Source: Heptranchias perlo (lineage: Eukaryota). From it: a stretch of DNA of 64,000 nucleotides. The number at the start of each line of letters is the position of its first letter. Position 1 is the first letter of the stretch. Shown here piece after piece: positions 20,569-42,967 of the stretch. Where the stretch lies: positions 1 to 64,000 of the forward strand of contig NW_027139264.1 of the NCBI RefSeq assembly GCF_035084215.1, in the 5' to 3' direction. The notes under the pieces are model-generated. The model was not told where the DNA came from, ran no database searches, and worked only from the letters and a program-made list of their open reading frames with translations. The position numbers were made by a program, and so were the translations under genes.

Positions 20569-20620
20569 ATGCTGCTTGTTACTTTACTGAACGTTTACTG
20601 TGTGCCCAACGTCTCCTCTG
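20569..20620 (+). CDS. MHC class I-like gene, exon 1 (signal peptide MLLVTLLNVYCVPNVSS)
   Basis: acaacATG start, hydrophobic 17-aa leader, strong phase-1 donor TCTG|GTAAGC. Joining G to AT of the alpha1 exon gives Asp1 in frame. Confidence 0.75.
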
Positions 20621-21134
20621 GTAAGCAAATCAAACAGCTTCTATCTGTGGACAGTATTTGAGGGGACACCGAGATTGAACCCATCTTCATCACAAGATGC
20701 TCTCGAGCGGCCCCTGGGTTTGGACTATCTCATTGCCTTGGGTGTGTGAGCGATTCAGGTTAAGGATGATCCCTGTTCTGGGGAGGGGTCACTGGGAGAG
20801 GTTGTGTCACTGATCTGTTTGCAAAGTGTTTGTTCGAGGCACTTTTCTTCAATTATTGTCAAGGCTCACAGACAAATAACAGCCATTTTGGGGGGTGAGG
20901 TATTGGAGCTGTACCTCGGAAGCAGTGGAAGGGAAGGGGATGGAGGGAATGGGAAGGGACAGGAAAGAAAAGGAAGGGGAAGGGAAGGGAAGGAATCGGA
21001 AAGGAAGGGAAAGGGAATGGAAGGGGAGGGAAGGAAAACCCTTTCCCTCGGATGGTGTTTGAAGGAGGATTCCATTATCCCCTTTCACATAACGGGCTCG
21101 ATTGTGGTTTTAGCTCCGAGACATTAGGCATCAC

Positions 21135-21310
21135 CTGGGCTGAGTTCAGAACGGAAATCTGGCCGGGCGGGGGGGATTTCAATAGATGGAAAATGCTCCA
21201 GGTTCTGTTCCTGCCGTGTGATCCTCCTCTCCAGATTTTGCTCTCTCTCTGCTCCGCCCAGTTGATGCTGAACACCCAGGTGGTAAAGGTGAAAATCGAC
21301 CTCAATATTA
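21135..21310 (-). other. Exon-like antisense segment inside class I intron 1 (coiled-coil-like peptide), tentative
   Basis: tgtggtccAG acceptor and CCCAG|GTGA donor; open frame NIEVDFHLYHLGVQHQLGGAEREQNLERRITRQEQNLEHFPSIEIPPARPDFRSELSP. Confidence 0.25.
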
Positions 21311-21624
21311 CTGGACCACAGACACGTGTGAACCTTTCAGAGATTGTGTTCTGATCGATGTGTTCTGCCTCCTCCCTCTCACCCCCATCCCTTGTTCGTG
21401 CCAAAACCCCATCAGCTCCTCCAACTCCACAGAATTGACTCAAAGGTTCATTTCTTCACCTTTAAAGCCCTCTCTGTCCTCCTCCCTTCCCACCTCCGCA
21501 ATCTCCCCCAATCTCATGCCCCCACATGCCCCCTCCGCTCCTCCCACACCGGCCTAACCCCTCCTTCTCCACTGCCTCTGTTCCACCACTGGGAGCCGAT
21601 CCTTCAGTCTCTCCTGTCCCTGCC

Positions 21625-23847
21625 CTCTCCAGCAATCTCCCTCAGGATTCCTGCCTTGTCCCTTCCCGGCCTCTCCACTGTTCCTGAATCAACTCCTGAG
21701 TGTGATTCTGGCTCCTCTTAAATCCTCTCTTTGGGCTCCTCCCTCCTGCTCTGTGCTCTGAGGCGTCTCCCTGTACACGAGGGCTGTTGTAGTAATGTAA
21801 GCTGCTGCACACAGTCAAAGCATCTCATCGGAACATGGGAACAGGAGGAGGCCATTCAGCCCCTCAAGCCTGTTCCGCCATTCAATTAGATCATGGCTGA
21901 TCTGTTTCTTAACTCCACCCACCCGCCTTGGTGCCATATCCCATAATAACCTTGCCTAACAAAAATCGATCAATCTCAGTTGTGAAATTTTCAATTGACC
22001 CCCAGCCTCAACAGCATTTTGGGGGAGAGAGTTCCAGATTTCCACTCCCCTTTGTGTGAAGAAACGCTTCCTGACATCACCCCTGAACGGCCTGGCTCTA
22101 ATTTTAAGGTGACGCCCCCTCTTGTTCTGGACTCTCCCACTGGAGGAAATAGTTTCTCTCTATCTTCAATATCAAATCCTTCAATGATCTTAATTACAGC
22201 ACCCGTTAATCTTCTGCACTCAAGGGAATACAAGCCTCGTCTGTGCAACCTGTCCTCATAATTTAACCCTTTCAGCCCCCAGTATGAAAGTACTTCTCAT
22301 AATGAATGGCGTTTCCCACATTACAACAGTGATGACACTTTCACATTACTTCACTTTCTGTGAAGCGCTTTGGGACATCCTGAGGTTGTGAAAGGTGATG
22401 TATAAAAAGATCTTTTGTTCTTTCCGAACCTTCTTGTGCTGCTTCAGCAGGGTGACACTGAAATCGAAGCAGATTCGAAGCCTGCCCCCCCGTTCCCACC
22501 TTCACCTCACAGCAACACAATGGACTTTGGGCTGTCCGATGTCCGATGTGTTGCTCAGGCCCACGACTGACTTTTATTTCTGAGCAAACACTGCCCGTTT
22601 ATTATAGTCTCTGAGCGGGTCAAGGCCAAAGTGAACTCTGTGTGTCCGATTGTGGGGAGAATGAGCTGCTGACTCTTCAATAATCAACTGGTGCTCGAGG
22701 CAAAAATACTCACAGTGATGTTGATCTGGGTGAATTAGAATAAATTGGCATCGAAGCAAATTCACAGACAGATTTTTATGTTAATTTTCAATGCACCGTC
22801 TTCGAGTCGCGCTTAACATGAGGCTCCTCAGAACAGCAATCCATGAGGATAACAGAACATTGAACAATGTCACCAAATCCAGTCAGTGGACGTCATGCTC
22901 AAACTGAGGGGGAGGGGGAAAGGGAGGGAGAGGGATAGTGGGAGGGAGATGGAGAGGGAGAATGGGAGGGGGAGTCGGAGGGAGAGTTGGAGGCAGAGGC
23001 TGAGGGGGAGGGGAGGGAGAGTGGAGGGGAGGGAGAGTGGAGGGGAGGGAGAGGCTGGGGGAGCTAGAGGGAGAGAGGGAGGGTGATGGGGAAGGGACAG
23101 AGAAGGGGAGCGAGAGGGAGAGGTGCAGGAGGGGGTGTGTGAGTGAAGAGAGAGGGTAAAGGTGGGGAGATGGGGAGGGAGAGGGGGAGTCAGACAAAGA
23201 GAGGGAGAGGAAAGGGAAGAGGATGAGGCAGATGGGGAGAGAGAGGGAGATGGGGAGGGAGAGGGTGGGAAAGGGAGAGAGGGATGGTGGGAGAGAGTGG
23301 GGGATGAGGAGGGGGAGGGGAGGGAGTGGGGAGATTATCTGGTCATTATCTCGTTGATGTTTGTGGGATCTTGCTGTGCGCAAATTGGCTGCCGTGTTTC
23401 CTACATTAAAACAGTGACTGCACTTCACTAATACTTCACTGTCTGTAAAACGCTTTGGGAGGTCCTGAGGTGGTGAAATCACAATAGGAATGTGAGTCTC
23501 TCTTTTCTTTGTGGTCCCATTGCCAGTGAGAGTCGATGCATTGGGAAGAGAATGGGAGGGGTGAAAGTGGGAGTCTGGAATAGACCATTGAAATACAGGG
23601 GGTGTAAACAGATGCGATGGTTCGGTGTTAATACTGGGCTGGGCCTCAGTGTGAACCCCTGCTGTAAGATGCAGGCTCAGACTCCACTCCCTGGGACCCA
23701 GTGACCAGAACAAGTCCCTCCATTCTAACTGGATCTGGTTATCAGACCTGCTGCACACAAGCACCAATAAGTAGCTTCAGACTCGAGTGGTGTTGAAAAG
23801 CGCAAGAGATTAAGTTACTGTTACAGCAGGTTCTCTCCTGGTTAATC
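21625..23847 (+). repeat. Local segmental duplication, copy 2: promoter copy without the leader exon, inside intron 1
   Basis: Matches 18293-20546; similarity ends at ...ctcctggttaatc, about 22 bp before the position of the leader ATG in copy 1. Confidence 0.93.
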
Positions 23848-24044
23848 CGTGTCCATGACTGACATTTATTTCTGGTCAAACACTGCCTGTTTATTGTAGT
23901 CTCTGAGCACGTCAAGGCCAAGGTGAACTCTAAGGGGTCGATTTTAACCCCATGAACGGGTGGGTTTGGGTGCAGGTGGGAAGGTAAAAATTGTAAAAAT
24001 CTAAAACCCGCCTTCCAACTGACCACTTCCGGTTTTAACGGCAT

Positions 24045-27000
24045 AGAACCATACAAAGGATACAGCACAGAAGGGGGCTATTCGGCCCATCGTGTCCGTG
24101 CCGGCTCGAAAAACAACCAGGTCCCCATTCTAGTCCCACCTTCCAGCACCCGGTCCGTAGCCCTGCAGCTTACAGCACTTTAGATGCAGGTCCAGGTACT
24201 TTTTAAAAGAGTTGAGGGTCCCTGCCTCTACCACCAATTCGGGCAGCGAATTCCATACACCCACCACCCTCTGGGTAAAAGTGTTTTTCCTCATGTCCCC
24301 TCTAATCCTTCCGCCAATCAGCTTAAAGCTATGTCCTCTAGTTCTTGAACTCTCCGCTAGGGGAAACAGGTATTTCCTGTCTACTCTATCTAGGCCCCTC
24401 ATAATTTTGTACACCTCAATCAAGTCTCCCCTCAGCCTCCTCTGCTCCAAGGAAAACAACCCCAGCCAATCCAATCTCTCCTCCGAGCTGCAATTTTCAA
24501 GCCCTGGCAACATTCTTGTAAATCTTCTCTGCACTCTCTCCAGAGCAATTACGTCCTTCCTGTAATGTGGTGACCAGAACTGCGCACAATACTCCAGCTG
24601 TGGCCTTACCAGCATTTTATACAGTTCCATCATTACATCCCTGATTTTGTATTCTATGCCTCTGCTAATAACGGAGAGCATTCCGTATGCCTTCTTCACA
24701 ACCTTATCGACCTGTACTGCCACCTTCAGGGACCTGTGCACATGCACTCCAAGGTCTCTCACTTCCTCTACCCCTCTCAATATATTCCAGTTTACTGTGT
24801 ATTCCCTTTTACTGTTTGCCCTCCCTAAGTGCATTACCTCACACTTCTCCAGGTTGAACTCCATTTGCCACTTTTCCGCCCACTCCACCAACCCATTGAT
24901 ATCTTCTTGGAGTCTACAGCTATCCTCTTCACTATCAACTGCACGGCCAATTTTTGTCGTCTATAAATTTGCCAATCATGCCCCCTACATTCAAGTCCAA
25001 ATCATTAATACATACCACAAACAGCAAGAAACCCAACACTGAGCCTTGTGGCACACCACTGGAAACGGATTTCCATTCTCAAAGACATCCATCGACTTTT
25101 ACCATTTGTTTCCTGTTACTGAGCCAATTTTGGATCCAATTCACCACATTTCCCTGTATCCCATGGGCTTTTACCTTTCTGACCAGTCTGCCATGTGGGA
25201 CCTTGTCAAATGCCTTACTAAAATCCATGTAGACAGCATCCATTGCACTACCCTCATCAATCCTCCTTGTCACTTCCTCAAAGAATTTAATCAGATTTGT
25301 AAGGCATGACCTTCCCTGAACAAATCCATGCTGACTATCCCTGATTAAACCATGCCTTTCCAAGTGACAGTTTATCCTATCTCTCAGTATTGATTCTAAT
25401 CGTTTGCCCACCACCGAGGTAAGACTGACCGGCCTATAATTGTTCGGCCTTTCCCTCGTACCCTTTTTAAACAACGGTACTACGTTTGCAGTCTTCCAGT
25501 CCTCCGGTACCTCCCCTGTATCTAGTGAGGATTGGAAAATGATCCTCAGAGCATCCGCTATTTCCTCACTGGCTTCCTTCAATAGCCTAGGAAACAATCC
25601 ATCCAGCCCTGGTGACTTATCAAATTTCAAGGATTCCACTCCCTCTGGTACTTCCTCTCTCGTTATGTTTATTTTATCCAATATTTCACACCTCTCCTCT
25701 TTAACTACTACGTCCAGATCATCCCTTTCCCTTATGAATACGAAGACAAAATATTCATTTAAAACCCTACCCACATCCTCTGCTTCTACACACAGGTTAC
25801 CCTTATCGTCCCTGATCGGTCCCACCTTTTCCTCAGCTATCCTCTTGTTCTTAATGTACTGATAAAACATCTTTGGGTTTTCTTTAATCTTACTCGTTAA
25901 TATTTCTTCATGCCCGCTCTTTGCTTTCCTTATTTCCTTTTTTACGTCATCCCTGTACTTTCTATACTCCTCCAGGCTTTCTGCAGTATTTAGTTTTCTG
26001 TGACAGTCATAATCTTTCTTTTCCTGCTTTATCTTGCCCCGTATACTTCTAGACAACCAGGGGGCTCTAAATTTGGCAGTGCCACCCTTTTTCTTTGAGG
26101 GGACGTGTCTGCATTGTACCCGTAGAATTTCACTTTTTAGTGCCTCCCACTGGCTTGCCACTGATTTCTCCTCAAGTAGTTGTGTCCAGTCCACTTCTGC
26201 CAAATCACCTCTAAGTTCTGTAAAATTTGCCTTCCCCCAATTTAAAACATTTACTCCTGATTTAACACTGTCCTTTTCCATAATAATGCTGAAACTAACT
26301 GAATTGTGGTCACCATCCCCAATATGGTCACCCACTGTCACTTCACCCACTTGCCCATCTTCATTTCCCAGGACTAAATCTCGAATGGCATCCCCTCTTG
26401 TTGGGCTTGTCACGTACTGGCTAAAAAAGTTCTCCTGGACACCAATCAAGAATTTTGCGCCCTCTGTGCCCCTCACACTGTTTGAATCCCAGTTGATGTT
26501 CGGGTAGTTGAAATCCCCTACTATTATTGCCCTCTTATTTTTGCACTCAGAAATTTGCCGACATATTTGTTCTTCTATCTCCCTTTCGCTATTCGGGGGT
26601 CTAGAGTACACTCCTAGTAGTGTGACTGCCCCTTTTTTATTCCTTAGCTCAACCCATACGGCCTCGATTAATGATCCATTTAGCATATCATCCCTTCTCA
26701 CAACTCTAATTGATTCTTTAACCAATAATGCTACCCCCCTCCTTTTTTATCACCCACTCGATCCTGCTTGAACACTCTATATCCAGGGATATTGAGCTGC
26801 CAATTATCCCCCTCTTTAAGCCAGGTTTCCATTATAGCAATGATATCATGCTGCCACGTGTCTATCTGTGCCCTTAGCTCATCTGCTTTGTTTGTAATAC
26901 TCCTTGAATTGAAGTATATACCCTTTAACCCCGTCAAATTCCTGTGCTGAACACTATTTAACCTTTGCTTTTTTGCATTTCTGAGTCGCAAACTACGTCA

Positions 27001-27395
27001 CTAACTGCTTTTCTACTTTGCGTTTCCTGGTCTGAATTTGTCCTATCTGGACCTGCCCTTTGGTTCCCATCCCCCACCATACTAGTTTAAACCCTCCCCA
27101 ACACAACTCGCAAATGTCCCCACGAGGATACTGGTCCCGGTTCTGCTTGGGTGCAATCCTTTCATCTTGTACAGGTCCCGCCTTTCCCAGAATCGGTCTC
27201 AATGCCTCAGGAATTTAAACCCCTCCCTCCTACACCATCTCTCAAGCCACGCATTCATCTGGTCTATTCTCCTATTTCTGCTCTCGCTGGCATGTGGCAC
27301 TGGGAGTAATCCTGAGATTACTTCCTTAGAGGTCCTGCTTTTTAATTTATTTCCTATCTCCCGATATTCTGCTTGCAGGACCTCATCCGTTTTTT
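24045..27395 (-). mobile_element. CR1 LINE, ~3.35 kb: end of ORF1 (esterase-like) plus frameshifted ORF2 (APE endonuclease and RT)
   Basis: ORF1 VISGLLPVPHASESRNRRIDQMNAWLERWCRREGF; endonuclease YFNSRSITNK, IIAIMETWL, IIVGDFNYP, DHN; RT YRPVSLTSVVGK, YMDFSKAFDKVPH; 3' end QGYGPGAGRWD. Confidence 0.95.
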
Positions 27396-27599
27396 TTTTA
27401 CAATACTTCACACTAAATTGTGGGAGTACGACTTAGGTTCAAACGAGTAAAAGGCGACTTGGGACAGACGTCAGGATGATATCTTCCTCATGCTAAAGCC
27501 TCGATTTTAACCTAACCTGTCCAGAGGGAATGGGATGGATTTGGTTCAACTTCAATGGAGCGTAAAATCGGGCAGGGTATAAATAGGGCGAACCATGTG

Positions 27600-28110
27600 A
27601 CCTGTTACTAAACGGGGAACAGAGAGGAGACAATAGGAGGGAGTCCACAGTTAAAGTCAGAGGTCCTGTGGTGGGATAAAGTTGATGTAGATAGGGTGGA
27701 GTCAGCTTGGAGCATCAACCAACTGATGTCCAGGTTCGGTGACAGGGTGTGGAGGGTGAGTGAGTCCAGAAGCTATTTGAAGGGTAGATTATCGGAGGAC
27801 GCACTGCTGGGGGGGATTTCCGTGGGGATGAAGAGTCAGGAGGTTTGGAGAATCGATCGCAGAGCAGAAGAACAATGGTGAAGATGGAGGTCACTGTAAG
27901 ATCTAGAAGCAGCGGAGGAATGGACTTCGGCCCAGGGGAGTGAATTTCTGGCCAGGAACCAGAGTGTAGAAAAATAAAGCTGAAAAACCAGTAGTACAGT
28001 CATAAACTCAGCAGGTAATAGCTGGGGGATGGGCTGTGGGCTGGACAAAGTTACCTTAACTCTTAAGCAGCTGAGTCTTCCAGTGGAGTAGCGTAGTGCT
28101 GAGAAGTCGA
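27600..28110 (-). mobile_element. Probable L2-like LINE endonuclease-region fragment, degenerate
   Basis: Minus strand contains pyrimidine-rich coding remnants (ctctgactttaac, i.e. a xDFN-like motif) with many disruptions. Confidence 0.4.
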
Positions 28111-28944
28111 GGAATTTAGAAGCCAAATTTGAGCAAAGATCCAGTTTTCACTGATGTAAACAAAGAGCAGGCCCGGTCGGGGAATGGGCAGTGGGCCCAG
28201 GTAAGTTTAAACTTGCAGCTTGAACTTGTGGGTAGGGGTAAAATGCACCCACTATTAGAGCCAGGGAACTTAAACAGTGGAAGAGAGGAGATTGGGGGAG
28301 AATGGGCAAAGGATGGCAATGGATGACCAAGGATAGGATTGTCCAGCAAAGGAGCTCCCGAGGGAGCAGCCAGCCCAGGAGCCATCTTGTTAACAGTAGG
28401 AATCGTAGGAACATAACATTGTACAGCACAGAAGAAGGCCATTTGGCCCATCATGCTATGCTGGCTCTCTGAAAGCGCTACCCACTTTCTCCTGACCTTT
28501 GCCCAGACTCTTTTAAAAAGAAAAATTAAAAAAAATATTTATCCACTTTCCTTTGAGCAGCTATTGTGGGACCTGTTCCCCCCTCTGGTCGGGCAGTCTG
28601 ACCAATGCTTTCCTGCTCCAGAACTCCTGGGAGCTCCTAACGGAAGCTGCCACTTCACCAAGCTCTGAGCTTCCAGCTAGTAAAATGAATGGTGGGAGAA
28701 TCACGGCTGAGGAATTTTCCAACGTGGGCTCGTGGTGTCCGCTTGGAGCATTGAAGCAGGAAATCCCAGCCTCCGTCTCCGAACATCCCTCTCCATTAAC
28801 AAAATTCCCCCTAATCTCTCCCTTTGCTCTTGACCTTAAATTTATGCCCTCTAGTTTCCGACTTACTGACCAACAGAAAGTGTTTATTCTCTTTATTTTC
28901 CAACCCCCTGAGAGTTTGGACCCCTCTATCAGATCCCCTTGACC

Positions 28945-29610
28945 ATTAGCAATTCGGAAGGCAAATGGTATGTCGGCCTTTATTACAAGAGGATTGGAGT
29001 GCAGGAGTAAAGATGTCTTACTGCAATTATACAGGGCCTTGGTGAGACCACACCTGGAGTATTGTGTGCAGTTTTGGTCTCCTTACCTAAGAAAGGATAT
29101 ACTTGCCGTAGAGGAAGTGCAACGAAGGTTCACCAGACTGATTCCTGGGATGGCAGGATTGTCGTATGAGGAGAGATTGAGTAGACTAGGCCTGTATTCT
29201 CTAGAGTTTAGAAGAATGGGAGGTGATCTCATTGAAACATACAAAATTCTTACAGGGCTCGACAGGGCAGACGCAGGGAGGATGTTTCCCTTGGCTGGGG
29301 CGTCTAGGACCAGGGGTCACAGTCTCAGAATAAGGGGTAGGTCATTTAGGACTGAGATGAGGAGAAATTTCTTCACTCAGAGGGTGGTGAATCTTTGGAA
29401 TTCTCTACCCCAGAGGGCTGTGGAGGCTCAGTCATTGAGTACATTCAAAACAGAGATCGATAGATTTCCAGATATTAAAGGCATCAAGGGATATGGGGAT
29501 AGTGCAGGAAAATGGGGTTGAGGTAGGAGATCAGCCATGATCTGATTGAGTGGTGGAGCAGGCTCGAGGGGCCGGATGGCCTACTCCTGTTCCTGTTTCT
29601 TATGTTCTTA
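28945..29610 (+). mobile_element. CR1 LINE 3' fragment
   Basis: LYRALVRPHLEYCVQFWSPYLRKD...FFTQRVVNLWNSLP...GYGDSAGKWG followed by a CR1-type 3'UTR. Confidence 0.92.
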
Positions 29611-29664
29611 TCTCTGTACCAATGAAAAGAATCCCAGTCTGTTCTCATAACTCAAGCCTCTCAT

Positions 29665-30305: not shown

Positions 30306-30429
30306 TGTAGCTGTCCACCAGATTCCCTGGGATCGCCCGAGCAAATCTCTTCCCGACCTTCTCCGTGAGCTTGACATCCTCTTCAACACATGGTATCCAA
30401 AATCGGACGCAACGTCCTCACTGTGGCCT

Positions 30430-31255: not shown

Positions 31256-31340
31256 CCAGGCTCAGCATTAGCCGTTTCCACTTTGAGTTACTTATGATTA
31301 ACGTCATTTTTGAGACTGGTTTCTGTCTGTGATCCTGCAG

Positions 31341-31601
31341 ATTTCCACATCCTCGCATTTTACTACATACTGAGCCGTGGCGGGGCCGAGATGCCCGAGT
31401 ACAGCTTGGTCGCGATGCTCGATGACTATGAGATAGTGTATTTCGACAGCACCCTGCAGCGGACTGTGCCCAGACAGCAGTGGATGGCCGACTCCTTCGA
31501 CAACCATCACTGGGACGCCATCGCCATCACAATGGCGGGGTTCCATGGTCTGGTCAGAGGAAACGCCGAGATATTTTACCGACAGCAACACGGTGCCTCG
31601 A
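31341..31601 (+). CDS. MHC class I-like gene, exon 2 (alpha1 domain)
   Basis: ctgcAG acceptor and A|GTGAGT donor, 261 bp, phase 1-1. (D)FHILAFYYILSRGGAEMPEYSLVAMLDDYEIVYFDSTLQRTVPRQQWMADSFDNHHWD... carries alpha1 hallmarks H3, DD, FDS, PRxxWM and W60. Confidence 0.95.
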
Positions 31602-33404: not shown

Positions 33405-35545
33405 AATCACAGAAAGGTGACAGCACGGAAGGAGGCCATTCGGCCCATTGAGTCCGTGCTGGTTCTATGCAAGTGCAATCCAGCTAGTCCCACTCCCCTG
33501 CCCTATCCCCGTAGCCCTGCAAATTTTTTCCTTTCATTACTTATCCAGTTCCCTTTTGAAGGCCACGATTGAATCTGCCTCCACCACCCCCTCGGGCCGT
33601 GCATTCCAGATCCTAACCACTCGCTGTGTAAAAAAGTTTTTCCTCAAGTCACCTTTGGTTCTTTTGCCAATCACCGTAAATCTATGACCTCTGGTTTTTA
33701 ACCCTTCCACCAATGGGAATAGTTTCTTCATGATTTTAAACACCTCTATCAAATCTCCTCGCAACCGTCTCTGTTCCAAGGAGAACAACCCCAGCTTCTC
33801 CAGTCTATCCACACAACTGAAGTCCCTCATCCCTGGAATCATTCTGGTAAATCTATTCTGCACCCTCTCTAAGGCCTTCACATCCTTCCTAAAGTGTGGT
33901 GCCCAGAACTGGACACCATACTCCAGTTGTGGCCGAACCAGTGTTTTATAAAGGTTCATCATGACTTCCATACTTTTGTACTCTATGCCTCGATTTATAA
34001 AGCCCAAGATCCCATATGCTTTTTTAACCACTTTCTCAACCTGCCCTGCTCCCTTGAATGATTTGTGCACATATACCCCCAGATCTCTCTGTTCCTGTAC
34101 CCTTTTAGAGTTGTGCCCTCTAGTTTATATTGCCTCTCCTCGTTCTTCCTACCAAAATGTATCACTTCGCATTTTTCTGCATTAAATTTCATCTGCCACG
34201 TGTCTGCCCATTCCACCAGCCTGTCTATATCCTCTTGAAATCTATCACTCTCCTCCTCACTGTTTACTACACTTCCAAGTTTTGTGCCATCTGCAAATTT
34301 TGGAATTGTGCCCTGTGCACCCAAGTCCAAGTCATTAATATTTATCAAGAAAAGCAGTGGTCCCAGCACCGACCCCTGGGGAACACCACTGTACACCTCC
34401 CTCCAGTCTGAAAAACAACCGTTCACCACTACTCTCTGTTTCCTGTCCCTTAGCCAATTTTGTATCCATGTTCCTACTGCCCCCTTTATTCCATGGGCCG
34501 CAATCTTGATGATAAGCCCACCATGCGGCACTTTATCAAACGCCTTTTGGAAGTCCATGTACATCACATCAACTGCATTGCCCTCATCTACTCTCTCTGT
34601 TACCTCATCAAAAAACTGTATCAGGTTAGTTGAATACGTTTTGCCTTTAAATCCATGCTGGCTTTCCCTAATCAATTCACACTCGTCCAAGTGACTGTTA
34701 ATTCTGTCCCGGATTATCGTTTCTAAAAGTTTCCCCACCACTGAGGTTAAACTGACTGACCTGTAGTTGCTGGGTTTGTCCTTACACCCTTTTTTTGAAC
34801 AAGGATATAACATTTGCAATTCTCCAGTCCTCTGGCACCACCCCTGTATCTACGGATGTTTGGAAGATTATGGCCAGTATCTCCGCAATTTCCACCCTTA
34901 CTTCCCTCAGCAACCTAGGATGCATCCCATCCAGACATGGTGACTTATCTACTTTAAGTACAGCTAGCCTTTCCAGTACCTCTTCTATATCAATTTTTAG
35001 CCCATCCAGTATCTCAACCATATCTTCCTTTACTGAGACTCTGGCAGCATCTTCTTCCTTGGTAAAAACAGATGCAAATTACTCATTTAGTACCTTGGCC
35101 ATCTCCTCTGCCTCCATGAGTAGATCTCCTTTATGGTCCCTAATCGGCCCCACCCCTCCTCTTACTACCTGTTTACTGTTTAGATGCCTATAGAAGACTT
35201 TTGGATTCCCTTTTATGTTGGCCGCCAGTCTATTCTCAGACTCTCTCTTTGCCCCTCTTATTTCCTTTTTCACTTCCCCTCTGAACTTTCTATATTCTGC
35301 CTGGTCCTCACTTGTATTATCAACCTGACATCTGTCATATGCCCCTTTTTTCTGTTTCATCTTACTCTCTATCTCTTTTGTCATCCAGGGAGCTCTGGCT
35401 TTAGTTGCCCTCCCTTTCCCCCTCGTGGAGACTGTACCCGAACCATCTCCTCCTTAAAGGCCGCCCGCTGTTCAATTACAGTTTTGCCTGACAATCTTTG
35501 ATTCCAATTTACCCGGGACCAGATCTGTTCTCATCCCGTTGAAAT
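33405..35545 (-). mobile_element. CR1 LINE, 5'-truncated and frameshifted ORF2
   Basis: NYRSVSLTSVVGK, YMDFQKAFDKVPH, GVPQGSVLGPLLF, KFADGTKL, FFTQRVVRIWN. Confidence 0.95.
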
Positions 35546-35644
35546 TCCAGAGATCGATGACTCTCTGTGACAATCTAACCTATTGCTAAGGTTAAAGTCC
35601 AAGACAGCAGGACATAAATGGAACCTCAACGTAACACAGCTGCT

Positions 35645-36157
35645 CAGGAGCATCGAAAGAGGAAGAGGCCATTCAGCCCCTCGAGCCTGCTCCACCATTC
35701 ATTTATATCATGGCTAATCTGCACCGTAACTCCATTTTCCAGCCTTTGCTTCCTATCCATCGATACCCTTACCTAACAAAAATTTAACAATCTCAGTCTT
35801 GAAAGCTCCAATGGGCCGCCAGCATCCCACAGCCTTTTGGGGGAGAGAGTTCCTGATTCCCACTCCCCTTTGTGTGATAAAGTGCTTCCTGATTTCACTC
35901 CTAAATGGCCTGGCTCTGAATCTAAGATCTTGATTCCCCCACCTGAGGAAATAGTCCCTCTGGAATTCCCTCCCTAAACCTCTCCGCCTCTCTCTCCTCC
36001 TTTAAGATGCTCCTTCAAACCTACCTCTTTGTCCAAGCTTTTGGTCACCTGTCCTAATATCTCCTTATGTGGCTCGGTGTCAAATTTTGTTTGTCAAGTG
36101 CCTTGTGATGTTTTACTCTGTGAAAGGCGCTATATAAATGCAAGTTGTTGTTGTTGT
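35645..36157. mobile_element. CR1 3' end (-) fused to an L2 3' end (+) with a (TTG)n tail, just upstream of the alpha2 exon
   Basis: aggccattcagcccctcgagcctg CR1 3'UTR; tttaagatgctccttcaaacctacctcttt...gctatataaatgcaagttgttgttgttg L2 tail. Confidence 0.75.
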
Positions 36158-36212
36158 ATGTACCCGATCGAACCCTTTTCACATTTTCAATTGACTTGAG
36201 TTGTTTCTCCAG

Positions 36213-36488
36213 GTGTTTTCTTTGTCCAGGGAATGTGTGGCTGCGAACTGAACAGCGACAACTCCACGGAGGGGTTTATAAAGTTTGGATATGACGGGGA
36301 GGACGCGTATGTTTTTGACAAGGACAGATTGAGTTGGATTGCGGTGAATCCAGAGTTCCAGACTTTAGCAGACCGGTGGAATGCGAACACCTTCATGAAC
36401 AAATACTTCAAGACCCTGTTGGAAAAGGACTGTGTGAAGTGGCTGCTGATATACCTTCGGGCTGGGCGAGAAGCACTACAGAGGAAAG
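36213..36488 (+). CDS. MHC class I-like gene, exon 3 (alpha2 domain)
   Basis: ttctccAG acceptor and AAAG|GTACC donor, 276 bp, phase 1-1. VQGMCGCEL...FGYDGED...W...RW...LEKDCVKWLLIYL...LQRK includes the C101-C164 pair. Confidence 0.97.
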
Positions 36489-36844
36489 GTACCTCGAGCG
36501 AGCGGGAACTGGAGGTGCCGTACAGGCAAAGTTTATATTCCCAGTCTGTCCTGAGCCAGCTGTTCCCGGACAGGGTAGCAGTGAGGGGTGCTGCACCTGG
36601 CCTCAGTACCCCTTGGGGTGGGTGGGGTGGGGATGGGGGAGATAATCGGGCAGGTGACCGAAATCCGATGACCTACTCAGTCTCCCCGGCTGGAAAGCCC
36701 GTGCGTGTTGACATCGGGTGAGGACGGGGTTCAACTAAATTGTAATACCCCCATGGTTGAATAGCGTCCTGGTCCTCACTGTGAAGGCTCACTCGTGAAC
36801 ACTGGGTGCTTGTGTGCGTTACCGGAACGTGACCCGTTACATGG

Positions 36845-37140
36845 AATTTACAACACAGAAACAGGCCATTCGGCCCAACAGGTCTATGCCAGTGTTATTG
36901 CTGCACCCTCCCTACTTCATCTCCCCCGATCAGCATATCCTTCTATTCCTTTCTCCCTCATGTGTTTATCCAGCTTCCCCTTAAAGGCATCTGTGCTATT
37001 CGCCTCAACTACTCCTTGTGAGAGCGAGCTCCACATTCAAACCACTCTCTGCGTTTCTCCTGAATTCCCCATTGGATTTATTAGTGACTCTCTTATATTT
37101 ATGGCCCCTCGTTCAGGCCTCTGCCACAAGTGGAAACATC
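36845..37140 (-). mobile_element. CR1 3' end, interrupted; resumes at 38799-38870
   Basis: acaggccattcggcccaac 3'UTR; gtggaaacatc joins atcttccctacgtctatcctatcaaaccc across the insertion. Confidence 0.7.
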
Positions 37141-38798
37141 GGGGGAAAAATTTGGATGTGGCCGTTTTTGGGCGGGGGCAGCGTGATGTGCTTTACCCCG
37201 TGTCCAATGGTCCCGGCGCAGGCAGGATGCAAGTTTCGACCCACCCGAGGACCGACCTGCGATCAGCGTTCCATCCCAGGCCTTGCATCTGGAATCAATG
37301 CAATTCACACTTTCCACCACCAGAGGGAGTCCAATCTCTTAAAGGGAGGATGTTTGTCAGAAATCTCTTAAAGGTAGCTGGTACCTGTTATTTGCTGAAA
37401 ATAACAGTCTGCACGGAGTCTGAACGGAGATCAGACATCACACACGTAAAACACGATGCAGGTCCCATCCCTATGTTTACACACTGATGAGTTATGTTAA
37501 AACATTGAATAAAGGTTGCACACTACTAAATCCCACATCCTCCAATCTGCACACCAGACCTCACCAATCTGCCGATCTGAGTTGGTACCAGGCCTGTGAG
37601 AGTGCATGCACCAGGGTTCTCTGCTGATGCACTAGAGGCCTTGGTGCAAGAGGTGGACAGAAGGAGGGACATCCTATATCCACAGTTGGTGGGGGGAGGG
37701 GGGCAAGAGGCCCTCCAGACAGATATCCAAAAGGCAGTGGGAGGCAGCGGGGGACGAAGTCAATCCCAGGCTCACAGCATCATGAACATGGATGTATTGC
37801 AGGAAGAAGTTCAATGCTTTGACATGAGTGGTCAAGGTGAGTGAGGTCAACTGTCAGGTGTTGTCTCCAACCAACTGCTCCACACACGACACCCCCATCA
37901 CCCACATACCAACAAACTCTTTCCATCAGTACTCAACTCTTCCCATCAGATGCTTCCTCTCACCCTTCCACATTACCACTGTTTCAAGCCGCCCACCCAC
38001 AACTCACAGGCCACACACACTGGCAGCTATTCAACCATGACAGGAACATCACCCAGACACAGGAGAAGGTGGCGCATATCAAGAGGCAGCAAGTGACAGT
38101 GGCATTCAGCCCCTCGAGCCTGTTCCACCATTCAATGAGATCATGGTGGACCTGTGACCTAACTCCATATACCCACCTTAGCCCCATATCCCTTAATACC
38201 CTTGGTTCACAGAAATCTATCAATCTCAGATTTAACATTCACAAGTGAGCTAGCATCAACTGCTGTCTGTAGAAGAGCGTTCCAAACATCTCCCACCCTT
38301 TGTGTGAAGAAGCATTTCCTAACTTCACACCTGCACATCCTGGCTCTAAATGTTTGGCTATGTCCCCGTGTCCCAGTATTCAAATGTAGGAGACCTCCGA
38401 AAACAGTTTTGAATGTCTTGGCAGCCAGAAGCAACAATCCAGCCACTAACCTGTAAATCCTGCATGGTCCCTTTAAATAGTGCCGGTGGGGGGTCCTCCA
38501 GGAACTGTAAGACACGTTCAGATGGTCGGGGTTAAGACTGTGCGTTGAGTTGAGCGTTAAGTCCCGAAATGGTGTCTATCACTTTAAATCAGCGTTGCAC
38601 ACTGATTGAAGCCATTTTCTCCCTACTTTACATGATTCCAGCGTTCGTTATCTGCGCCTGCGCTAACTCCTATACCAAGATGGCGTCTGGCGCACGTCAC
38701 GCTGGAAATGTGCGTGCGCATCCAAGACGCCATCTTGGATGTCGGAGAGGCCGTCTAGCGCCGAAACAACGGGCGCTACACGGCCCTATTTAGCGCCC
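37141..38798 (+). mobile_element. Degenerate PIF/Harbinger-type DNA transposon with a Myb/SANT-like gene remnant (37596-37836) and a nested CR1 fragment (~38098-38375)
   Basis: RVHAPGFSADALEALVQEVDRRRDILYP, then a shifted frame RQWEAAGDEVN..S*TWMYCRKKFNALT. Ends are GGG...CCC, flanked by ATC on both sides (3-bp target duplication). Confidence 0.65.
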
Positions 38799-39009
38799 AT
38801 CTTCCCTACGTCTATCCTATCAAACCCTTTCATAATCTTAACGACCTCTATCAGGTGACCCCTCAGCTGAACTCCGGTGAACTCCAGCTGTCTCTCAGCA
38901 TCAGTCATCTGCCTTCAGGCCGAGAAAATTGATGGTGGTGGGCGGGGTAGAAATGAAGGCAAAAGAAGAGAACTTGTCACCGATTGTACTCTTTGTTTAA
39001 ATCTCTCAG

Positions 39010-39282
39010 TCGCCCCTGAGGTGTTTATTGGGAAGAGGAGTGACGGGGACAGAGTGCTAAGGGTCTCCTGCCTTGTGTCGGGGTTCTACCCCTGGGCCAT
39101 CGAGGTGACTTGGTTGGGGAATGGCGAGGAGATCGCTGACATTGAATCCAGTGACGTGCTGCCCAACCAGGATATGACCTATCGGGTACTGAAAACGATC
39201 GAGCTGAGTGGAGACGACAGGAAGAGCTACTCCTGTCATATCGAGCACGCCAGCCTCCTGCGGGGGATCAACGTACCCTGGG
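39010..39282 (+). CDS. MHC class I-like gene, exon 4 (alpha3, Ig C1-set domain)
   Basis: ctctcAG acceptor and TGGG|GTGAGT donor, 273 bp, phase 1-1. VAPEVF...VSCLVSGFYPWAIEVTW...VLPNQDMTY...YSCHIEHASL...VPW matches the Ig/MHC YxCxxxH signature. Confidence 0.97.
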
Positions 39283-39299
39283 GTGAGTGGCAAATCGGG

Positions 39300-40650
39300 G
39301 GGGGGGCCTCAGGGTCTTTCCCTGTGTCTCGGGGGGGCCGCGAGGTACTTCCTGGAACTCTGGGTCCTTCCCCGATTCTCGGGAGGGCCGCAGGGCTTTT
39401 CCCCGTGTCTTGGGGGCCCACAGGGTCCTTCCCCATGCCTCTGGGTCATTCCCCGTGCCTCTGGGTCATTCCCTGTGCCTCTGGGTCATTCCCTGTGCCT
39501 CTGGGTCCTTCCCCGTGCCTCTGGGTCCTTCCCCATTCCTCTGCATTCTTCCCCATGCCTCTGGGTCATTCCCTGTGCCTCTGGATCATTCCCCGTTCCT
39601 CTGCATCCTTCCCTGTGCCTCTGGGTCATTCCCTGTGCCTCTGGATCATTCCCTGTGCCTCTGGATCATTCCCTGTGCCTCTGGGTCCTTCCCCGTGCCT
39701 CTGGATCATTCCCTGTGCCTCTGCATCCTTCCCTCTGCCTCTGGGTCCTTCCCTGTGCCTCTGGATCATTCCTCGTGCCTCTGCATCCTTCCCTGTGCCT
39801 CTGGGTCCTTCCCCGTGCCTCTGGATCATTCCCCATGCCTCTGCATCCTTCCCCGTGCCTCTGGGTCCTTCCCTGTGCCTCTGGATCATTCCTCGTGCCT
39901 CTGCATCCTTCCCTGTGCCTCTGGGTCATTCCCCGTGCCTCTGCGTCCTTCCCTGTGCCTCTGGGTCATTCCCCGTGCCTCTGGGTCATTCCCCTTGCCT
40001 CTGGGTCCTTCCCTGTGCCTCTGGGTCATTCCCCGTGCCTCTGGATCATTCCCCGTTCCTCTACATCCTTCCTCATGTCTCTGCATCCTTCCCTGTGCCT
40101 CTGGGTCATTCCCTGTGCCTCTGGATCATTCCCTGTGCCTCTGGGTCATTCCCCGTGCCTCTGGGTCCTTCCCCGTGCCTCTGGGTCCTTCCCTGTGCCT
40201 CTGGATCATTCCTCGTACCTCTGCATCCTTCCCTGTGCCTCTGGATCCTTCCCCGTGCCTCTGGGTCCTTCCCCGTGCCTCTGGGTCATTCCCTGTGCCT
40301 CTGCATCATTCCCCGTGTCTCAGGGTCCTTCCCCGTGCCTCTGGATCATTCCCCGTTCCTCTGCATCCTTCCCTGTGCCTCTGGGTCCTTCCCTGTGTCT
40401 CAGGGTCATTCCCTGTGCCTCTGCATCCTTCCCCGTGCCTCTGGGTCATTGCTGTGCCTCAGGGTCCTTCCTTGTGTCTCTGCGTCCTTCCCCACTTCTC
40501 TGGATCCTCCCATGTGACTCTAGGTCATTCCCTGTGACTCGAGGTCATTCCCTGTGACTCGAGGTCATTCCCTGTGCCTCAAGGTCATTCCCTGTGCCTC
40601 AAGGTCATTCCCTGTGCCGCAGGGTCCTTCCCCGTGTCTCTGCATCCTTC
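39300..40650. repeat. 20-bp minisatellite (CTCTGGGTCATTCCCTGTGC), ~60 regular units plus degenerate flanks, in intron 4
   Basis: Strict 20-bp periodicity visible at 39421-40450. Confidence 0.95.
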
Positions 40651-41090
40651 GGGGGAGCGCTGCACTGTCAAAGGGGCAGTACTGAGGGAGTGCGGTACTG
40701 TCGGAGGGTCAGTACTGAGGGAGAGCTGCACTGTCGGAGGGTCAGTACTGAGGGAGTGCTGCACTGTGGGAGGTGCCATCTTTCAGATGAGATGTTAAGT
40801 CAAGGCCCCAACTGCCATCTCAGGTGGAGGTAAAACATCCCATGACATTATTTCGAGGATGAGCAGGAGAGTTATCCCCAGTGTCCTGGCCAATATTTAT
40901 CCCTCAATAAACATGAAAATAAAAAAAGTGATCTGATCATTATCACATTGCTGGTCGTGGGATCTTGCTGTGCGCAAATTGGCTGCCGGGTTTTCCACAT
41001 CACAACAGTGACTACACTTCAAAATAGTTTAATTGGCTGTAAAGTGCTTTGAGACATCCTGAGCTCATGAAAGGTGTTATATAAATGCAC
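40651..41090 (+). mobile_element. Deu-domain SINE (SacSINE1-like) with ~3 copies of the 33-bp segment
   Basis: cagtactgagggagtgctgcactgtgggaggtgccatctttcagatgagatgttaa...gtgtcctggccaatatttatccctcaa followed by an L2-like tail. Confidence 0.8.
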
Positions 41091-41284
41091 CTCTTCCTTT
41101 TCTCTTTCAATAGCACATGCCCACCTTTCACGGTGTTACACTGAGCAAAATCCCCTTCAATTTACCCAATAGCACAATTGGTAAATGACCTGCCCAATGT
41201 GGAACAAAGACGGACAGACCAGAGGGTCCCAGATTTAACCCCTGGCCTCTGCTGAGTGGGAGGATTTCAATTGGAGAGACTGCC

Positions 41285-42300
41285 CTTTCCCCATAGCCCT
41301 GACTCAATTCCAAACGAATCCCACTGCCCCACTCTCTCCCCATAGCCCTGTATCAATCCCAAACTAATCCCACTGCCCCACTCTCTCCCCATAGCCGTGT
41401 AACAATCCCAAACTAATCCCACTGCCCCGCGCCCTCCCCATAGCCCTGTATCAATCCCAAACTAATCCCACTGCCCCACTCTCTCCCCATCGCCCGGTAT
41501 CAATCCCAAACTAATCCCACTGCCCCACTCTCTCCACATAGCCCTGTATCAATCCCAAACTAATCCCACTGCCTCACTCTCTCCCCAGAGCCCTGTATCA
41601 ATCCCAAACTAATCCCACTGCCCCACTCTCTCCACACAGCCCTGTATCAATCCCAAACTAATCCCACTGCCCTACTCTCTCCCCATAGCCCTGCATCAAT
41701 CCCAAACTAATCCCACTGCCCCACTCTCTCCCCATCGCCCTGTATCAATGCAAAACTAATCCCACTGCCCCACTCTCTCCCCATAGCCCTGTATCAATCC
41801 TAAACTAATCCCACTGCCTCACTCTCTCCCCATAGCCCTGCAGCAATCCCAAACTAATCCCACTGCCCCAATCTCACCATAGCCCTGTATCAATCCCAAA
41901 CTAATCCCACTGCCCCACTCTCTCCCCATTGCTCTGTATCAATCCCAAACTAATCCCACTGCCCCACACTCTCCCCATAGCCCTGTATCAATCCAAAACT
42001 AATCCCACTGTCCCACTCTCTCCCCATAGCCCCGTATCAATCCCAAACTAATCCACTGTCCCACTCTCTCCCCATAGCTCTGCATCAATCCCAAACTAAT
42101 CCACTGTCCCGCTCTCTCCCCATAGCCCTGTATCAATCCCAAACTAATCCCACTGCCCCACTCTCTCCCCATAGCCCTGTATCAATCCCAAACTAATCCC
42201 ACTGCCCCACTCTCTCCCCATAGCCCTGTATCAATCCCAAACTAATCCCACTGCCCCACTCTCTCCCCACAGTCCTGTATCAATCCCAAACTAACCTCAC
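41285..42300. repeat. 49-bp minisatellite (~20 units) derived from a CR1 3' end; CR1 remnant continues to ~42430
   Basis: Unit CCCCATAGCCCTGTATCAATCCCAAACTAATCCCACTGCCCCACTCTCT reads QGYGERVGQWD* on the minus strand, the CR1 ORF2 terminus. Confidence 0.9.
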
Positions 42301-42776
42301 TGCCCTGTATCTCCCTGAGCTTCGAATGTTTAGCCACCCTTCCCTTAAAACATACAATGGTCTCTGTCTCAACCACTCCCTGTGGCCAAACATTGCAATG
42401 TGCAACCATCATCTGTGTAAAGAAATGGCCAATAGTTTCCCCTCCTTGGCATTGCACTGTTATTTTACAGTGTGTAATTCTGCAGCCTCTATCCCTGATA
42501 TCAGATGGTTCGTGTGTTGATTTAATCTGCTGACTACAGAATTGCACTTTAAACTCTGTAACGAGTCAGGAACTGCCCTGTTTCTGAGATTAATGAATGG
42601 TAACTAGTTGTATTCTGCTTATTATTTGTAATGGAGCCAGTTAGGCATGTTTCAATCCATTTTAAATTGTTCATTACCCTATCAGACATGTACTGTACCA
42701 GTGTGCAGCTTAATGAAGCACCTAATGAAATCATTAGGAAATAATTATTGATCAACATCATTTTAAAATTCAATAG

Positions 42777-42967
42777 AGAGGGCGACAGAAGGAGGCACGA
42801 ATGTCGGGATTGGGACTGGAGCAGCAGCCGTCTCACTCACTCTTCTTGGCATCATCGTCGGAATTGGCTTCTGGAGCAAGAGGCAAAACAGGAGAGACCA
42901 GCAGAGCCCATCAGAGACCAGCAAAGCCCATCAGAGACCAGTAGAAACTGGCAGAGTCCTGCCGTGA
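42777..42967 (+). CDS. MHC class I-like gene, exon 5 (connecting peptide, transmembrane segment, cytoplasmic tail and stop)
   Basis: caatAG acceptor, phase 1. Reads (E)RATEGGTNVGIGTGAAAVSLTLLGIIVGIGFWSKRQNRRDQQSPSETSKAHQRPVETGRVLP*: a hydrophobic stretch followed by basic stop-transfer residues. Not in the ORF track frame. Confidence 0.85.

What the first reader, a model, noticed from the sequence alone, without database searches (positions are those of the whole stretch)
20569..42967. Intact, highly divergent nonclassical MHC class I gene spread over 22 kb of transposon debris
Seen in sequence: five exons (52+261+276+273+191 nt) join through GT-AG phase-1 introns into an uninterrupted 350-aa leader-a1-a2-a3-TM-cytoplasmic protein. 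By manual alignment to HLA-A2 numbering, the classical anchor set is mostly lost (Y7F, Y59H, Y/R84Q, T143L, K146R, Y159L, Y123A), with only W147, W167 and Y171 kept. Structural cysteines and beta2m-contact residues (Q96, D119, G120, D122, alpha3 LPN) are retained. Established knowledge: that pattern marks a nonclassical class I, and cartilaginous fish have several named lineages (UBA, UCA, UDA, UEA, UFA) besides classical UAA. Inference: this is an expressed member of one of these lineages or an undescribed one. I cannot assign the lineage by eye.
Basis: partly seen in the sequence, partly recalled or inferred. Interest (0 to 1): 0.85.

Follow-up and report, generated by a model that had tools for sequence, protein, structure and literature searches.

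The report
Shark nonclassical MHC class I gene
This is a real, intact and spliced nonclassical MHC class I gene of the sevengill shark, already predicted in the public annotation, whose greasy binding groove suggests that it shows something other than peptides to the immune system.

Summary
All junctions are GT-AG in phase 1, and the frames are open.

- **Public model.** Each exon peptide is 100% identical, at the expected offsets, to RefSeq XP_067834333.1 of Heptranchias perlo, 350 aa, named "MR1-like". The gene is therefore already predicted.
- **Splicing.** A 1,438-nt contig of one public run holds exons 3 and 4 joined, with 0 differences.
- **Lineage.** In per-domain trees every exon falls in one clade with support 100/99, 99/97 and 97/96. 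The clade has one full-length model in each of 13 shark and ray species.
- **Relatives.** The lineage is not classical UAA. It is not UFA (PDB 8gm8, 29% identity) and not UGA (PDB 9ch4, 41%). It groups with UFA and UGA and is sister to UGA on alpha1.
- **Printed name.** I could not establish it. UDA is the likeliest, by elimination.
- **Groove.** The peptide-end anchors are lost and the groove-type positions are the most hydrophobic of the groups compared.
- **Copy number.** H. perlo has 11 near-identical models on 7 scaffolds.

The scan noted this stretch once more, and similar genes elsewhere in this genome. I score it as a new member of a known kind, of moderate interest.

The parts
20569..20620 (+). 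Exon 1: start codon and 17-residue leader, plus the first base of a split codon
   Evidence: The leader peptide is found at offset 0 of P0255. The exon is unique in the window at up to 3 mismatches.
31341..31601 (+). Exon 2: alpha1 domain
   Evidence: It is 100% identical to P0255 residues 19-104. The best solved relative is 9ch4 (UGA) at 83 bits. Clade support is 100/99.
36213..36488 (+). Exon 3: alpha2 domain, with C101/C164, an extra Cys at the position-99 column and an N-S-T sequon
   Evidence: A spliced contig covers 36213-36486 with 0 differences. Clade support is 99/97.
39010..39282 (+). Exon 4: alpha3, an Ig C1-set domain
   Evidence: The same contig covers 39008-39282 with 0 differences. 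Clade support is 97/96.
42777..42967 (+). Exon 5, coding part: connecting piece, transmembrane helix, cytoplasmic tail and stop
   Evidence: The model has a helix at residues 303-327. The last 26 or so codons lie in a degenerate 10-bp repeat at 42889-43107.
25079..26725 (-). LINE fragment (endonuclease and reverse transcriptase) in intron 1
   Evidence: RVT_1 at 61.9 bits and Exo_endo_phos_2 at 37.8 bits.
33995..34819 (-). LINE reverse-transcriptase fragment in intron 2
   Evidence: RVT_1 at 96.7 bits.
21898..23848 (+). Copy in intron 1 of the 2 kb that lie just upstream of exon 1 (18547-20547); it lacks the leader exon
   Evidence: blocks of 89-97% identity. The likeness ends about 20 nt before the ATG.
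39423..40642 (.). 20-bp tandem array in intron 4
   Evidence: The alpha3 frame reads on through it as a 546-aa open frame.
41288..42305 (.). 49-bp tandem array in intron 4

Best explanation
The window holds one copy of a conserved elasmobranch nonclassical MHC class I gene, in the sharpnose sevengill shark (Heptranchias perlo).

**What it encodes.** A type I membrane glycoprotein: leader, alpha1, alpha2, an Ig-like alpha3, a transmembrane helix and a short tail.

**Where it sits among relatives.** The lineage predates the split of sharks and rays. It belongs to a supergroup with the two solved shark nonclassical molecules UFA and UGA, closest to UGA.

**How it probably works (inferred).**
- It probably pairs with beta2-microglobulin.
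- Its groove has lost the residues that clamp the ends of a peptide.
- The groove is lined with hydrophobic residues that barely vary between species.
- It therefore most likely holds a conserved hydrophobic non-peptide ligand, such as a lipid. It would show this at the cell surface to T cells or other lymphocytes.

**Shown versus inferred.** Gene structure, identity, lineage placement and splicing of one junction are shown. Beta2m pairing, the ligand class and the receptor are inferred.
For: **Structure and identity.** Every exon is 100% identical to XP_067834333.1.

**Species and copy number.**

**Splicing.** In run X1, a 1,438-nt contig lies on 36213-36486 and on 39008-39282 at adjacent record positions (814/815), with 0 differences.

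**Orthologues.** There is one full-length model in each of 13 species. E-values fall from 1e-104 or lower within the lineage to 2.7e-52 outside it. Two shorter second models of the lineage, P0175 and P0176, and one 611-aa Mustelus model fall between.

**Trees.**
- Lineage clade: alpha1 100/99, alpha2 99/97, alpha3 97/96.
- Rays form a clade inside it.
- Supergroup with UFA and UGA: 88/81 on alpha1 and 92/90 on alpha2.
- Sister to UGA on alpha1: 95/92.

**Structure prediction.**
- The AF2 model of the public protein has mean pLDDT 82.2.
- Its best match is 9ch4, UGA: Z 28.7, rmsd 1.4 A over 268 residues, 41% identity.

**Groove.**
- Of the eight peptide-end anchor columns that classical shark UAA fills with Y7, Y59, R84, T143, K146, W147, Y159 and Y171, only W147 and Y171 are kept.
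- Hydrophobic share at 44 groove-type positions: 0.58 for the lineage (13 rows, 0.57-0.60), 0.54 for UFA, 0.44 for UGA and 0.43 for UAA.
- Most of these positions are invariant across the 13 species.

**Literature.** A 2025 review reports, as a personal communication, that crystal structures and mass spectrometry suggest lipid binding by UFA and UGA (PMC12562908, passages read).
Against: **No direct evidence.** There is no ligand, beta2m or receptor evidence for this lineage.

**Limits of the groove measure.** The hydrophobic share rests on a hand map of positions and on sequence alone. I could not measure the groove volume of the model.

**Signals that point away from a lipid presenter.**
- By sequence the protein is nearer MR1 (about 181 bits) and classical class I than CD1. 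No CD1-only chain reached E 1e-35 among the 60 rows listed.
- None of the 13 tails has a YxxPhi or [DE]xxxL[LI] sorting motif. The CD1-type route through endosomes is therefore not indicated.
- UGA, the nearest relative said to bind lipid, scores no more hydrophobic than classical UAA on my measure.

**Limits of the RNA evidence.**
- Only one junction (E3-E4) was seen.
- It was seen in one run, whose kind (RNA) is the tool's guess.
- With 11 near-identical copies, the transcript cannot be assigned to this locus.

**Limits of the trees.**
- The alpha3 tree does not join the lineage with UGA.
- The alpha2 tree leaves the three lineages unresolved.
Confidence: 0.6

Rival explanations
1. It is a peptide presenter with an unusual anchoring mode, like some nonclassical or non-mammalian class I molecules.
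For: - W147, W167 and Y171, the alpha2 disulfide and the overall class I fold are kept.
- Structural Z-scores to bird classical class I (27.6) are within about 1 of the score to UGA (28.7).
Against: - Six of the eight termini-clamping residues are replaced, and the same way in all 13 species.
- Near-invariance of the groove argues against varied peptides.
- The 11 H. perlo models show no alpha1/alpha2 groove variation.
Confidence: 0.15
2. It carries no antigen. It serves as a ligand for an innate receptor or in another role, as HFE, FcRn or ZAG do.
For: - ZAG (Z 25.9), HFE (25.6) and FcRn (24.0) are close structural matches.
- The strongly conserved surface and the low copy number in most species would also fit a fixed receptor-ligand pair.
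Against: - The conserved hydrophobic residues sit at positions that face the groove rather than the outer surface (by the position map).
- The nearest relatives are reported to hold lipids (PMC12562908).
Confidence: 0.18
3. It is a shark counterpart of MR1, presenting small metabolites.
For: - RefSeq names it MR1-like.
- The alpha2 exon's best solved matches are MR1 chains: 79 bits against 66 for UGA.
- In Foldseek, MR1 chains fill ranks 2-32 apart from a second 9ch4 chain and one untitled entry.
Against: - The lysine that forms the Schiff base in MR1 (K43) aligns with a threonine (alignment).
- On alpha1, MR1 scores only 27-29 bits against 83 for UGA.
- No MR1 sequence could be put in the trees, so orthology was not tested by phylogeny.
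Confidence: 0.04
4. This particular copy is a silent duplicate in a repeat-rich array, and the transcript comes from another copy.
For: - There are 11 near-identical models on 7 scaffolds, some truncated.
- The gene sits between large satellites.
- The region upstream of exon 1 is duplicated into intron 1.
Against: - The frame is intact and all splice sites are canonical.
- The spliced contig matches this copy's exons 3 and 4 with 0 differences over 549 nt.
- Other copies share these exons, so this does not settle it.
Confidence: 0.1

Closest known systems
Shark nonclassical MHC class I UGA (PDB 9ch4, released 2026-03-18)
   Same: - It is the best solved relative by sequence: 240.6 bits, E 2.5e-70.
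- It is the best by fold: Z 28.7, rmsd 1.4 A, 268 of 268 residues.
- It is sister on the alpha1 tree, 95/92.
- Many groove-type residues are shared: L5, Y9, Y22, T66, G69, F70, G76, G97, A123, W133, Y156, L159, L160 and Y171.
- In the little skate, models of the two lineages carry consecutive accessions and both are recorded on a 127,421-bp contig.
   Different: - Identity is only 41%, and the two form separate, well supported clades.
- The window lineage has F7, H59, M/I63, M67, I80, C99, L143, R146, F152 and W167. UGA has Y, Y, D/Y/N, E, E, F, F, K, K and L at those positions.
- The hydrophobic share is higher here: 0.58 against 0.44.
Shark nonclassical MHC class I UFA (PDB 8gm8, released 2024-11-27)
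   Same: - It is in the same supergroup on the alpha1 (88/81) and alpha2 (92/90) trees.
- Its hydrophobic share is similarly high, 0.54.
- It is found in sharks and rays.
   Different: - Identity is 29% and Z is 22.4.
- The alpha2 domains are only 24-26% identical.
MR1 of mammals
   Same: - Highest alpha2 sequence score, 79 bits.
- TM-scores of 0.88-0.90.
- It is the source of the RefSeq name.
   Different: - Threonine stands where MR1 has K43.
- The alpha1 match is weak.
CD1
   Same: - Hydrophobic groove lining and loss of the peptide anchors, so a possible likeness in function.
- Chicken CD1-1 scores Z 26.7.
   Different: - No CD1-only chain reached E 1e-35 among the 60 rows listed.
- A lemur CD1b sits on a very long branch away from the lineage.
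- There is no tyrosine sorting motif in any of the 13 tails.
Classical shark class I UAA (PDB 6lup; Triakis and Pristiophorus sequences)
   Same: The same domain plan, exon plan, disulfides and beta2m-contact motifs.
   Different: - Identity is 29-30%.
- It lies in a separate clade.
- The anchors are lost in the window lineage.

Membership tests
MHC class I superfamily | An alpha1/alpha2 MHC_I fold followed by an Ig C1-set alpha3 domain | tested here: met
   Pfam gives MHC_I at 67 bits for alpha2 and C1-set at 61 bits for alpha3; alpha1 alone scores 27 bits against a cut-off of 28.3. All 999 chains aligned scored Z 8 or more, and the rows shown are class I or class I-like.
MHC class I superfamily | Exon-per-domain gene plan with phase-1 introns | tested here: met
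   The E3-E4 joint was seen in a contig.
Classical class I (UAA) | Conserved residues that bind the peptide termini (Y7, Y59, Y/R84, T143, K146, W147, Y159, Y171) | tested here: not met
   Only W147 and Y171 are kept. Triakis and Pristiophorus UAA show all eight in the same columns.
Classical class I (UAA) | Placement in the UAA clade | tested here: not met
   The window exons fall in a separate clade on alpha1 and alpha2.
UGA (9ch4) | Placement in the clade that holds the 9ch4 orthologues | tested here: not met
   P0004 is a 9ch4 orthologue (E 1e-138). The UGA clade (98/92 and 99/96) is separate from the window's clade. Identity is 41%.
UFA (8gm8) | Placement in the clade that holds the 8gm8 orthologues | tested here: not met
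   P0029 and P0050 have 8gm8 as best hit. They form a separate clade. Identity is 29%.
UDA (Almeida et al. 2020) | Clustering with the published UDA reference sequences | not testable with these tools
   - The two J Immunol papers are not held and supplements are closed.
- No member named by a depositor turned up.
- Single copy and linkage to multicopy class Ib genes fit what PMC10751288 says of UDA.
MR1 | Lysine 43, which forms a Schiff base with the ligand | tested here: not met
   A threonine aligns with K43 in the HMMER alignment to human MR1.
CD1 | Sequence membership in the CD1 family | tested here: not met
   No CD1-only chain is among the 60 rows listed at E 1e-35 or better. The alpha3 exon alone matches CD1 fusion chains, as any C1-set domain would.
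CD1 | Tyrosine-based endosomal sorting motif in the tail (feature recalled, not from a call) | tested here: not met
   0 of 13 orthologue tails have YxxPhi or [DE]xxxL[LI].
CD1 | A deep hydrophobic groove that binds lipid | tested here: inconclusive
   The hydrophobic share is 0.58 at 44 positions. No volume or ligand could be measured.

The most novel reading that the evidence does not exclude
The lineage has no name in print. It would be a third branch of the shark UFA/UGA group of lipid-type presenters, older than the shark-ray split.

- Its groove is the most hydrophobic of the three.
- It has an invariant unpaired cysteine on the groove floor (the position-99 column, 13 of 13 species; F in UGA). 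That cysteine could tether or sense a ligand.
- In the sevengill shark alone it has grown from a single gene into a family of near-identical copies set among satellites.
Probability: 0.3. Interest if true: 0.6.

Novelty: new member of a known kind. Interest (0 to 1): 0.38.

Why it matters
Shark nonclassical class I lineages bear on whether presentation of non-peptide antigens is as old as classical MHC. This is the claim made for UFA in PMC10751288.

This gene adds a third conserved lineage beside the two solved ones. It comes with a verified exon model, a spliced transcript and a list of invariant groove residues to test.

The value is limited because the protein is already in RefSeq and the lineage may already be described as UDA. 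The points that stand out as testable are the invariant groove cysteine and the copy-number expansion in Heptranchias.

Tried and rejected
**Tried, with no gain**
- **Papers naming PDB entries.** Searches for 9CH4 and 8GM8 gave nothing relevant: 8 unrelated papers and 0 papers.
- **Papers on a shark CD1-like molecule.** The searches found only PMC10751288 and PMC12562908. In this library I therefore found no primary paper on UFA or UGA, and none that lets a name be tied to this lineage. Subscription journals are not covered.
- **Lineage papers.** PMC7002201, PMC8454915 and their DOIs are not held. PMC8010645 says nothing on class I lineages.
- **Supplements.** The supplements of PMC10751288, which may list gene accessions by lineage, are closed.
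- **Short named fragments.** A word search with the alpha2 exon alone (candidates of 50-159 aa) found none.
- **Chimaera search.** A search from the Callorhinchus protein P0194 returned a chimaera-only multicopy family and no elasmobranch orthologue. It did not help to place UDA.
- **Atlas look-up.** It gave only generic MHC_I clusters.
- **Promoter and terminator scan.** This is a bacterial-type scan and found nothing of use.

**Rejected readings**
- **UCA.** A GenBank dogfish entry should have surfaced, as the Triakis entries of the same era did. The existence of that entry is recalled, not checked.
- **Several leader cassettes.** The leader exon occurs once in the window.

**Method notes**
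- **First alignment.** In the first whole-protein alignment the big 'F10-like' group lacked C101, C164 and Y7 in the expected columns, which I first took for misalignment. I re-cut each domain and re-aligned. The re-alignment showed the same pattern, so that group truly lacks the alpha2 disulfide.
- **Rows dropped.** Rows whose BLAST match to an exon was under 50 residues (45) were dropped before the trees:
  - 15 of 87 for alpha1 and 3 of 87 for alpha2.
  - 5 of 53 for alpha1 and 2 of 53 for alpha2.
  - All three Callorhinchus rows and CD1b were among those dropped from alpha1.
- **Tree.** It used 53 chosen rows. 19 rows were picked by hand from the F10-named set, 15 of them from the roughly 55 of the big multicopy group.

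Full report
**1. Observation**

Reading the sequence at the five places gives the exons below.

| Exon | Coordinates | Length (nt) | Boundaries |
|---|---|---|---|
| E1 | 20569-20620 | 52 | ATG ... \|gtaagc |
| E2 | 31341-31601 | 261 | cag\| ... \|gtgagt |
| E3 | 36213-36488 | 276 | cag\| ... \|gtacct |
| E4 | 39010-39282 | 273 | cag\| ... \|gtgagt |
| E5 | 42777-42967 | 191 | tag\| ... tga |

- Every intron is GT-AG in phase 1.
- The lengths sum to 1053 nt, which is 350 codons and a stop.
- The in-frame pieces translate without a stop.
- Searched exon by exon, alpha2 matches Pfam MHC_I at 67 bits and alpha3 matches C1-set at 61 bits. Alpha1 alone scores 27 bits for MHC_I, just under the cut-off of 28.3.
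- The introns hold LINE endonuclease and reverse-transcriptase fragments on the minus strand and four tandem arrays.
- The gene is flanked by a 57-bp satellite (1455-13133) and a 37-bp satellite (49235-64000).
- No other class I exon shows among the open frames of 70 aa or more in the rest of the window.

Each exon was searched on its own.

**2. Identity**

A full HMMER scan with the alpha1 exon found one protein at 70% identity, a little-skate model named 'MR1-like'. A word search from that protein returned a tight group of 'MR1-like' models in sharks and rays.

- Within the group E-values are 1e-104 or lower. The next lineage starts at 2.7e-52.
- Between these fall two shorter second models of the same lineage (Pristiophorus P0175, Leucoraja P0176) and one 611-aa Mustelus model (P0174).

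One member of the group is from Heptranchias perlo. Its 90% cluster holds 11 H. perlo models on 7 scaffolds.

- Per-exon BLAST shows that leader, alpha1, alpha2, alpha3 and tail are each 100% identical to P0255 (RefSeq XP_067834333.1, 350 aa). The offsets are 0, 19-104, 106-196, 198-287 and 289-350.
- Residues D18, S105, V197 and E288 of P0255 are what the split codons read by eye give.

**3. Expression**

The look-up of sequencing runs on 36213-39282 listed 9 runs. None is on record as RNA; the kind is the tool's guess. I laid X1, X2, X5 and X7 on 36100-39400.

- **X1.** One contig of 1,438 nt lies on 36213-36486 (record 815-1088) and on 39008-39282 (record 540-814), with 0 other letters.
  - The two pieces abut in the record, so intron 3 is removed.
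  - The two-base shift from my junction is the AG shared by the exon end and the intron end.
  - The parts of the record outside these pieces have the lengths expected for E5 plus a 3' UTR (539 nt) and for E2, E1 and a 37-nt 5' UTR (350 nt). That is arithmetic, not something I saw.
- **X2.** A 349-nt contig covers exon 4 with one difference.
- **X5 and X7.** In the pieces listed, these cover only repeats.

This is one junction, one sample and one study. With 11 near-identical copies, the locus of origin is open.

**4. Lineage**

By sequence against solved structures:
- The alpha1 exon is far closest to 9ch4, at 83 bits against 43 for the next.
- The alpha2 exon is closest to MR1, at 79 bits against 66 for 9ch4.
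- The alpha3 exon's best single-domain match is 9ch4.

The fold searches gave the entry titles:
- 9ch4 is 'shark nonclassical MHC class I, UGA'.
- 8gm8 is 'shark nonclassical MHC class I, UFA'.

Stored proteins anchor both lineages:
- P0004 is a 9ch4 orthologue, with E 1e-138.
- P0029 and P0050 have 8gm8 as best hit.

In careful per-domain trees the window exon always falls in one clade of 15 rows: 13 species, P0255 and the window.

| Domain | Lineage clade support | Relation to UFA and UGA |
|---|---|---|
| alpha1 | 100/99 | Supergroup of 23 rows 88/81; sister to UGA 95/92 |
| alpha2 | 99/97 in the reduced set (87/93 in the larger set) | Supergroup 92/90; the three lineages unresolved |
| alpha3 | 97/96 | Does not join the lineage with UGA |

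- Inside the clade, the four rays group together. This is as expected for orthologues.
- The gene is therefore not UAA, UFA or UGA.
- A review counts three single-copy shark class Ib lineages: UDA, UFA and UGA (PMC12562908, passages). PMC10751288 places single-copy UDA in a cluster with multicopy UEA (passages).
- In H. perlo a copy of this lineage is recorded on a scaffold of the same length (453,415 bp) as many models of a multicopy class I group.
- By elimination, UDA is the likeliest printed name. I put that at about 0.6, but I could not reach any UDA sequence to test it.

**5. Groove and other features**

I mapped 44 groove-type positions by hand from conserved landmarks. In the same columns the Triakis and Pristiophorus UAA proteins show Y7, Y59, R84, T143, K146, W147, Y159 and Y171, which supports the map.

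- Most groove-type positions are invariant across the 13 species. Among these is a cysteine in the position-99 column, next to C101. UGA has phenylalanine there.

| Group | Hydrophobic share at the 44 positions |
|---|---|
| This lineage (13 rows) | 0.58 (range 0.57-0.60) |
| UFA | 0.54 |
| UGA | 0.44 |
| UAA | 0.43 |
| Three bony-vertebrate class I | 0.45 |

Other features:
- An N-x-T sequon in alpha2 is kept in 13 of 13 species.
- No tail has a YxxPhi or [DE]xxxL[LI] motif, 0 of 13.
- Threonine aligns with MR1's K43.
- The 11 H. perlo models differ from P0255 at 0-4 residues, or 8 in one with a different tail end. Only two of the differences are in alpha1 or alpha2.

**6. Structure**

For the whole protein I used the public protein P0255, not a joined model.

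- AF2 with an 83-row alignment gave mean pLDDT 82.2 and pTM 0.70. Confidence is low only in the leader, the stalk and the tail.
- The best match is UGA: Z 28.7, rmsd 1.4 A, 268 residues, 41% identity.
- Bird classical class I, MR1, chicken CD1-1 and YF1*7.1 are tied about 1-2 Z units lower.
- The fold therefore says 'class I, nearest UGA' and does not decide the ligand.

**7. Verdict**

- The gene is a real, spliced nonclassical class I gene. Its lineage is conserved across sharks and rays and lies next to the two solved lineages that are said to bind lipid.
- A hydrophobic non-peptide ligand is the most likely cargo, but that is inference.
- Novelty is modest. The protein is already in RefSeq, and the lineage may be the published UDA.

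Noticed in passing
window 18547-20547 and 21898-23848: About 2 kb lying right upstream of exon 1 is repeated inside intron 1, in blocks of 89-97% identity. The likeness stops about 20 nt before the ATG, so the copy has the putative promoter region but no leader exon. A CCAAT lies about 106 nt before the ATG in both copies.
   Followed up: partly
window 42889-43107: The last 26 or so codons of the cytoplasmic tail, the stop and the start of the 3' UTR lie in a degenerate 10-bp repeat (22 copies, 64% matches). The Pristiophorus orthologue has a much longer repetitive tail of the same Q-x-x-A-E-T-x-R type, so tail length seems to drift with this repeat.
   Followed up: partly
window 1455-13133 and 49235-64000: Two large satellites bracket the gene: a 57-bp unit with about 204 copies and a 37-bp unit with about 398 copies that runs off the window. 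There is also a 25-bp array at 2-1374.
   Followed up: no
window 38877-40517: The alpha3 exon frame stays open for 546 codons because it reads on through the 20-bp tandem array of intron 4. All three forward frames are open across that array.
   Followed up: no
H. perlo proteins P0167 and P0247-P0256: The lineage has one full-length model in each of the other 12 species. Two of those species also have a shorter second model. H. perlo has 11 models on 7 scaffolds, three of them on the 463,596-bp scaffold that carries this window's protein. Several start inside alpha1. This is either real expansion or redundant assembly.
   Followed up: partly
proteins P0177-P0237 ('F10 alpha chain-like' of many sharks): A large multicopy shark class I group lacks the alpha2 disulfide. 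It has valine in the C101 column in 51 of 59 rows, and cysteine in the C164 column in only 7. It may be the published multicopy UEA lineage; I did not test this.
   Followed up: partly
Callorhinchus proteins P0194, P0203, P0209 and P0290-P0301: The elephant shark has its own multicopy family of divergent class I-like proteins (15 distinct sequences at 65-100% identity to P0194). No closer relative turned up in sharks or rays.
   Followed up: partly
alpha2 exon, window 36236-36238: A cysteine two residues before the conserved C101 is invariant in all 13 species of the lineage, and is phenylalanine in UGA. By the position map it sits on the floor of the groove and has no obvious partner.
   Followed up: partly
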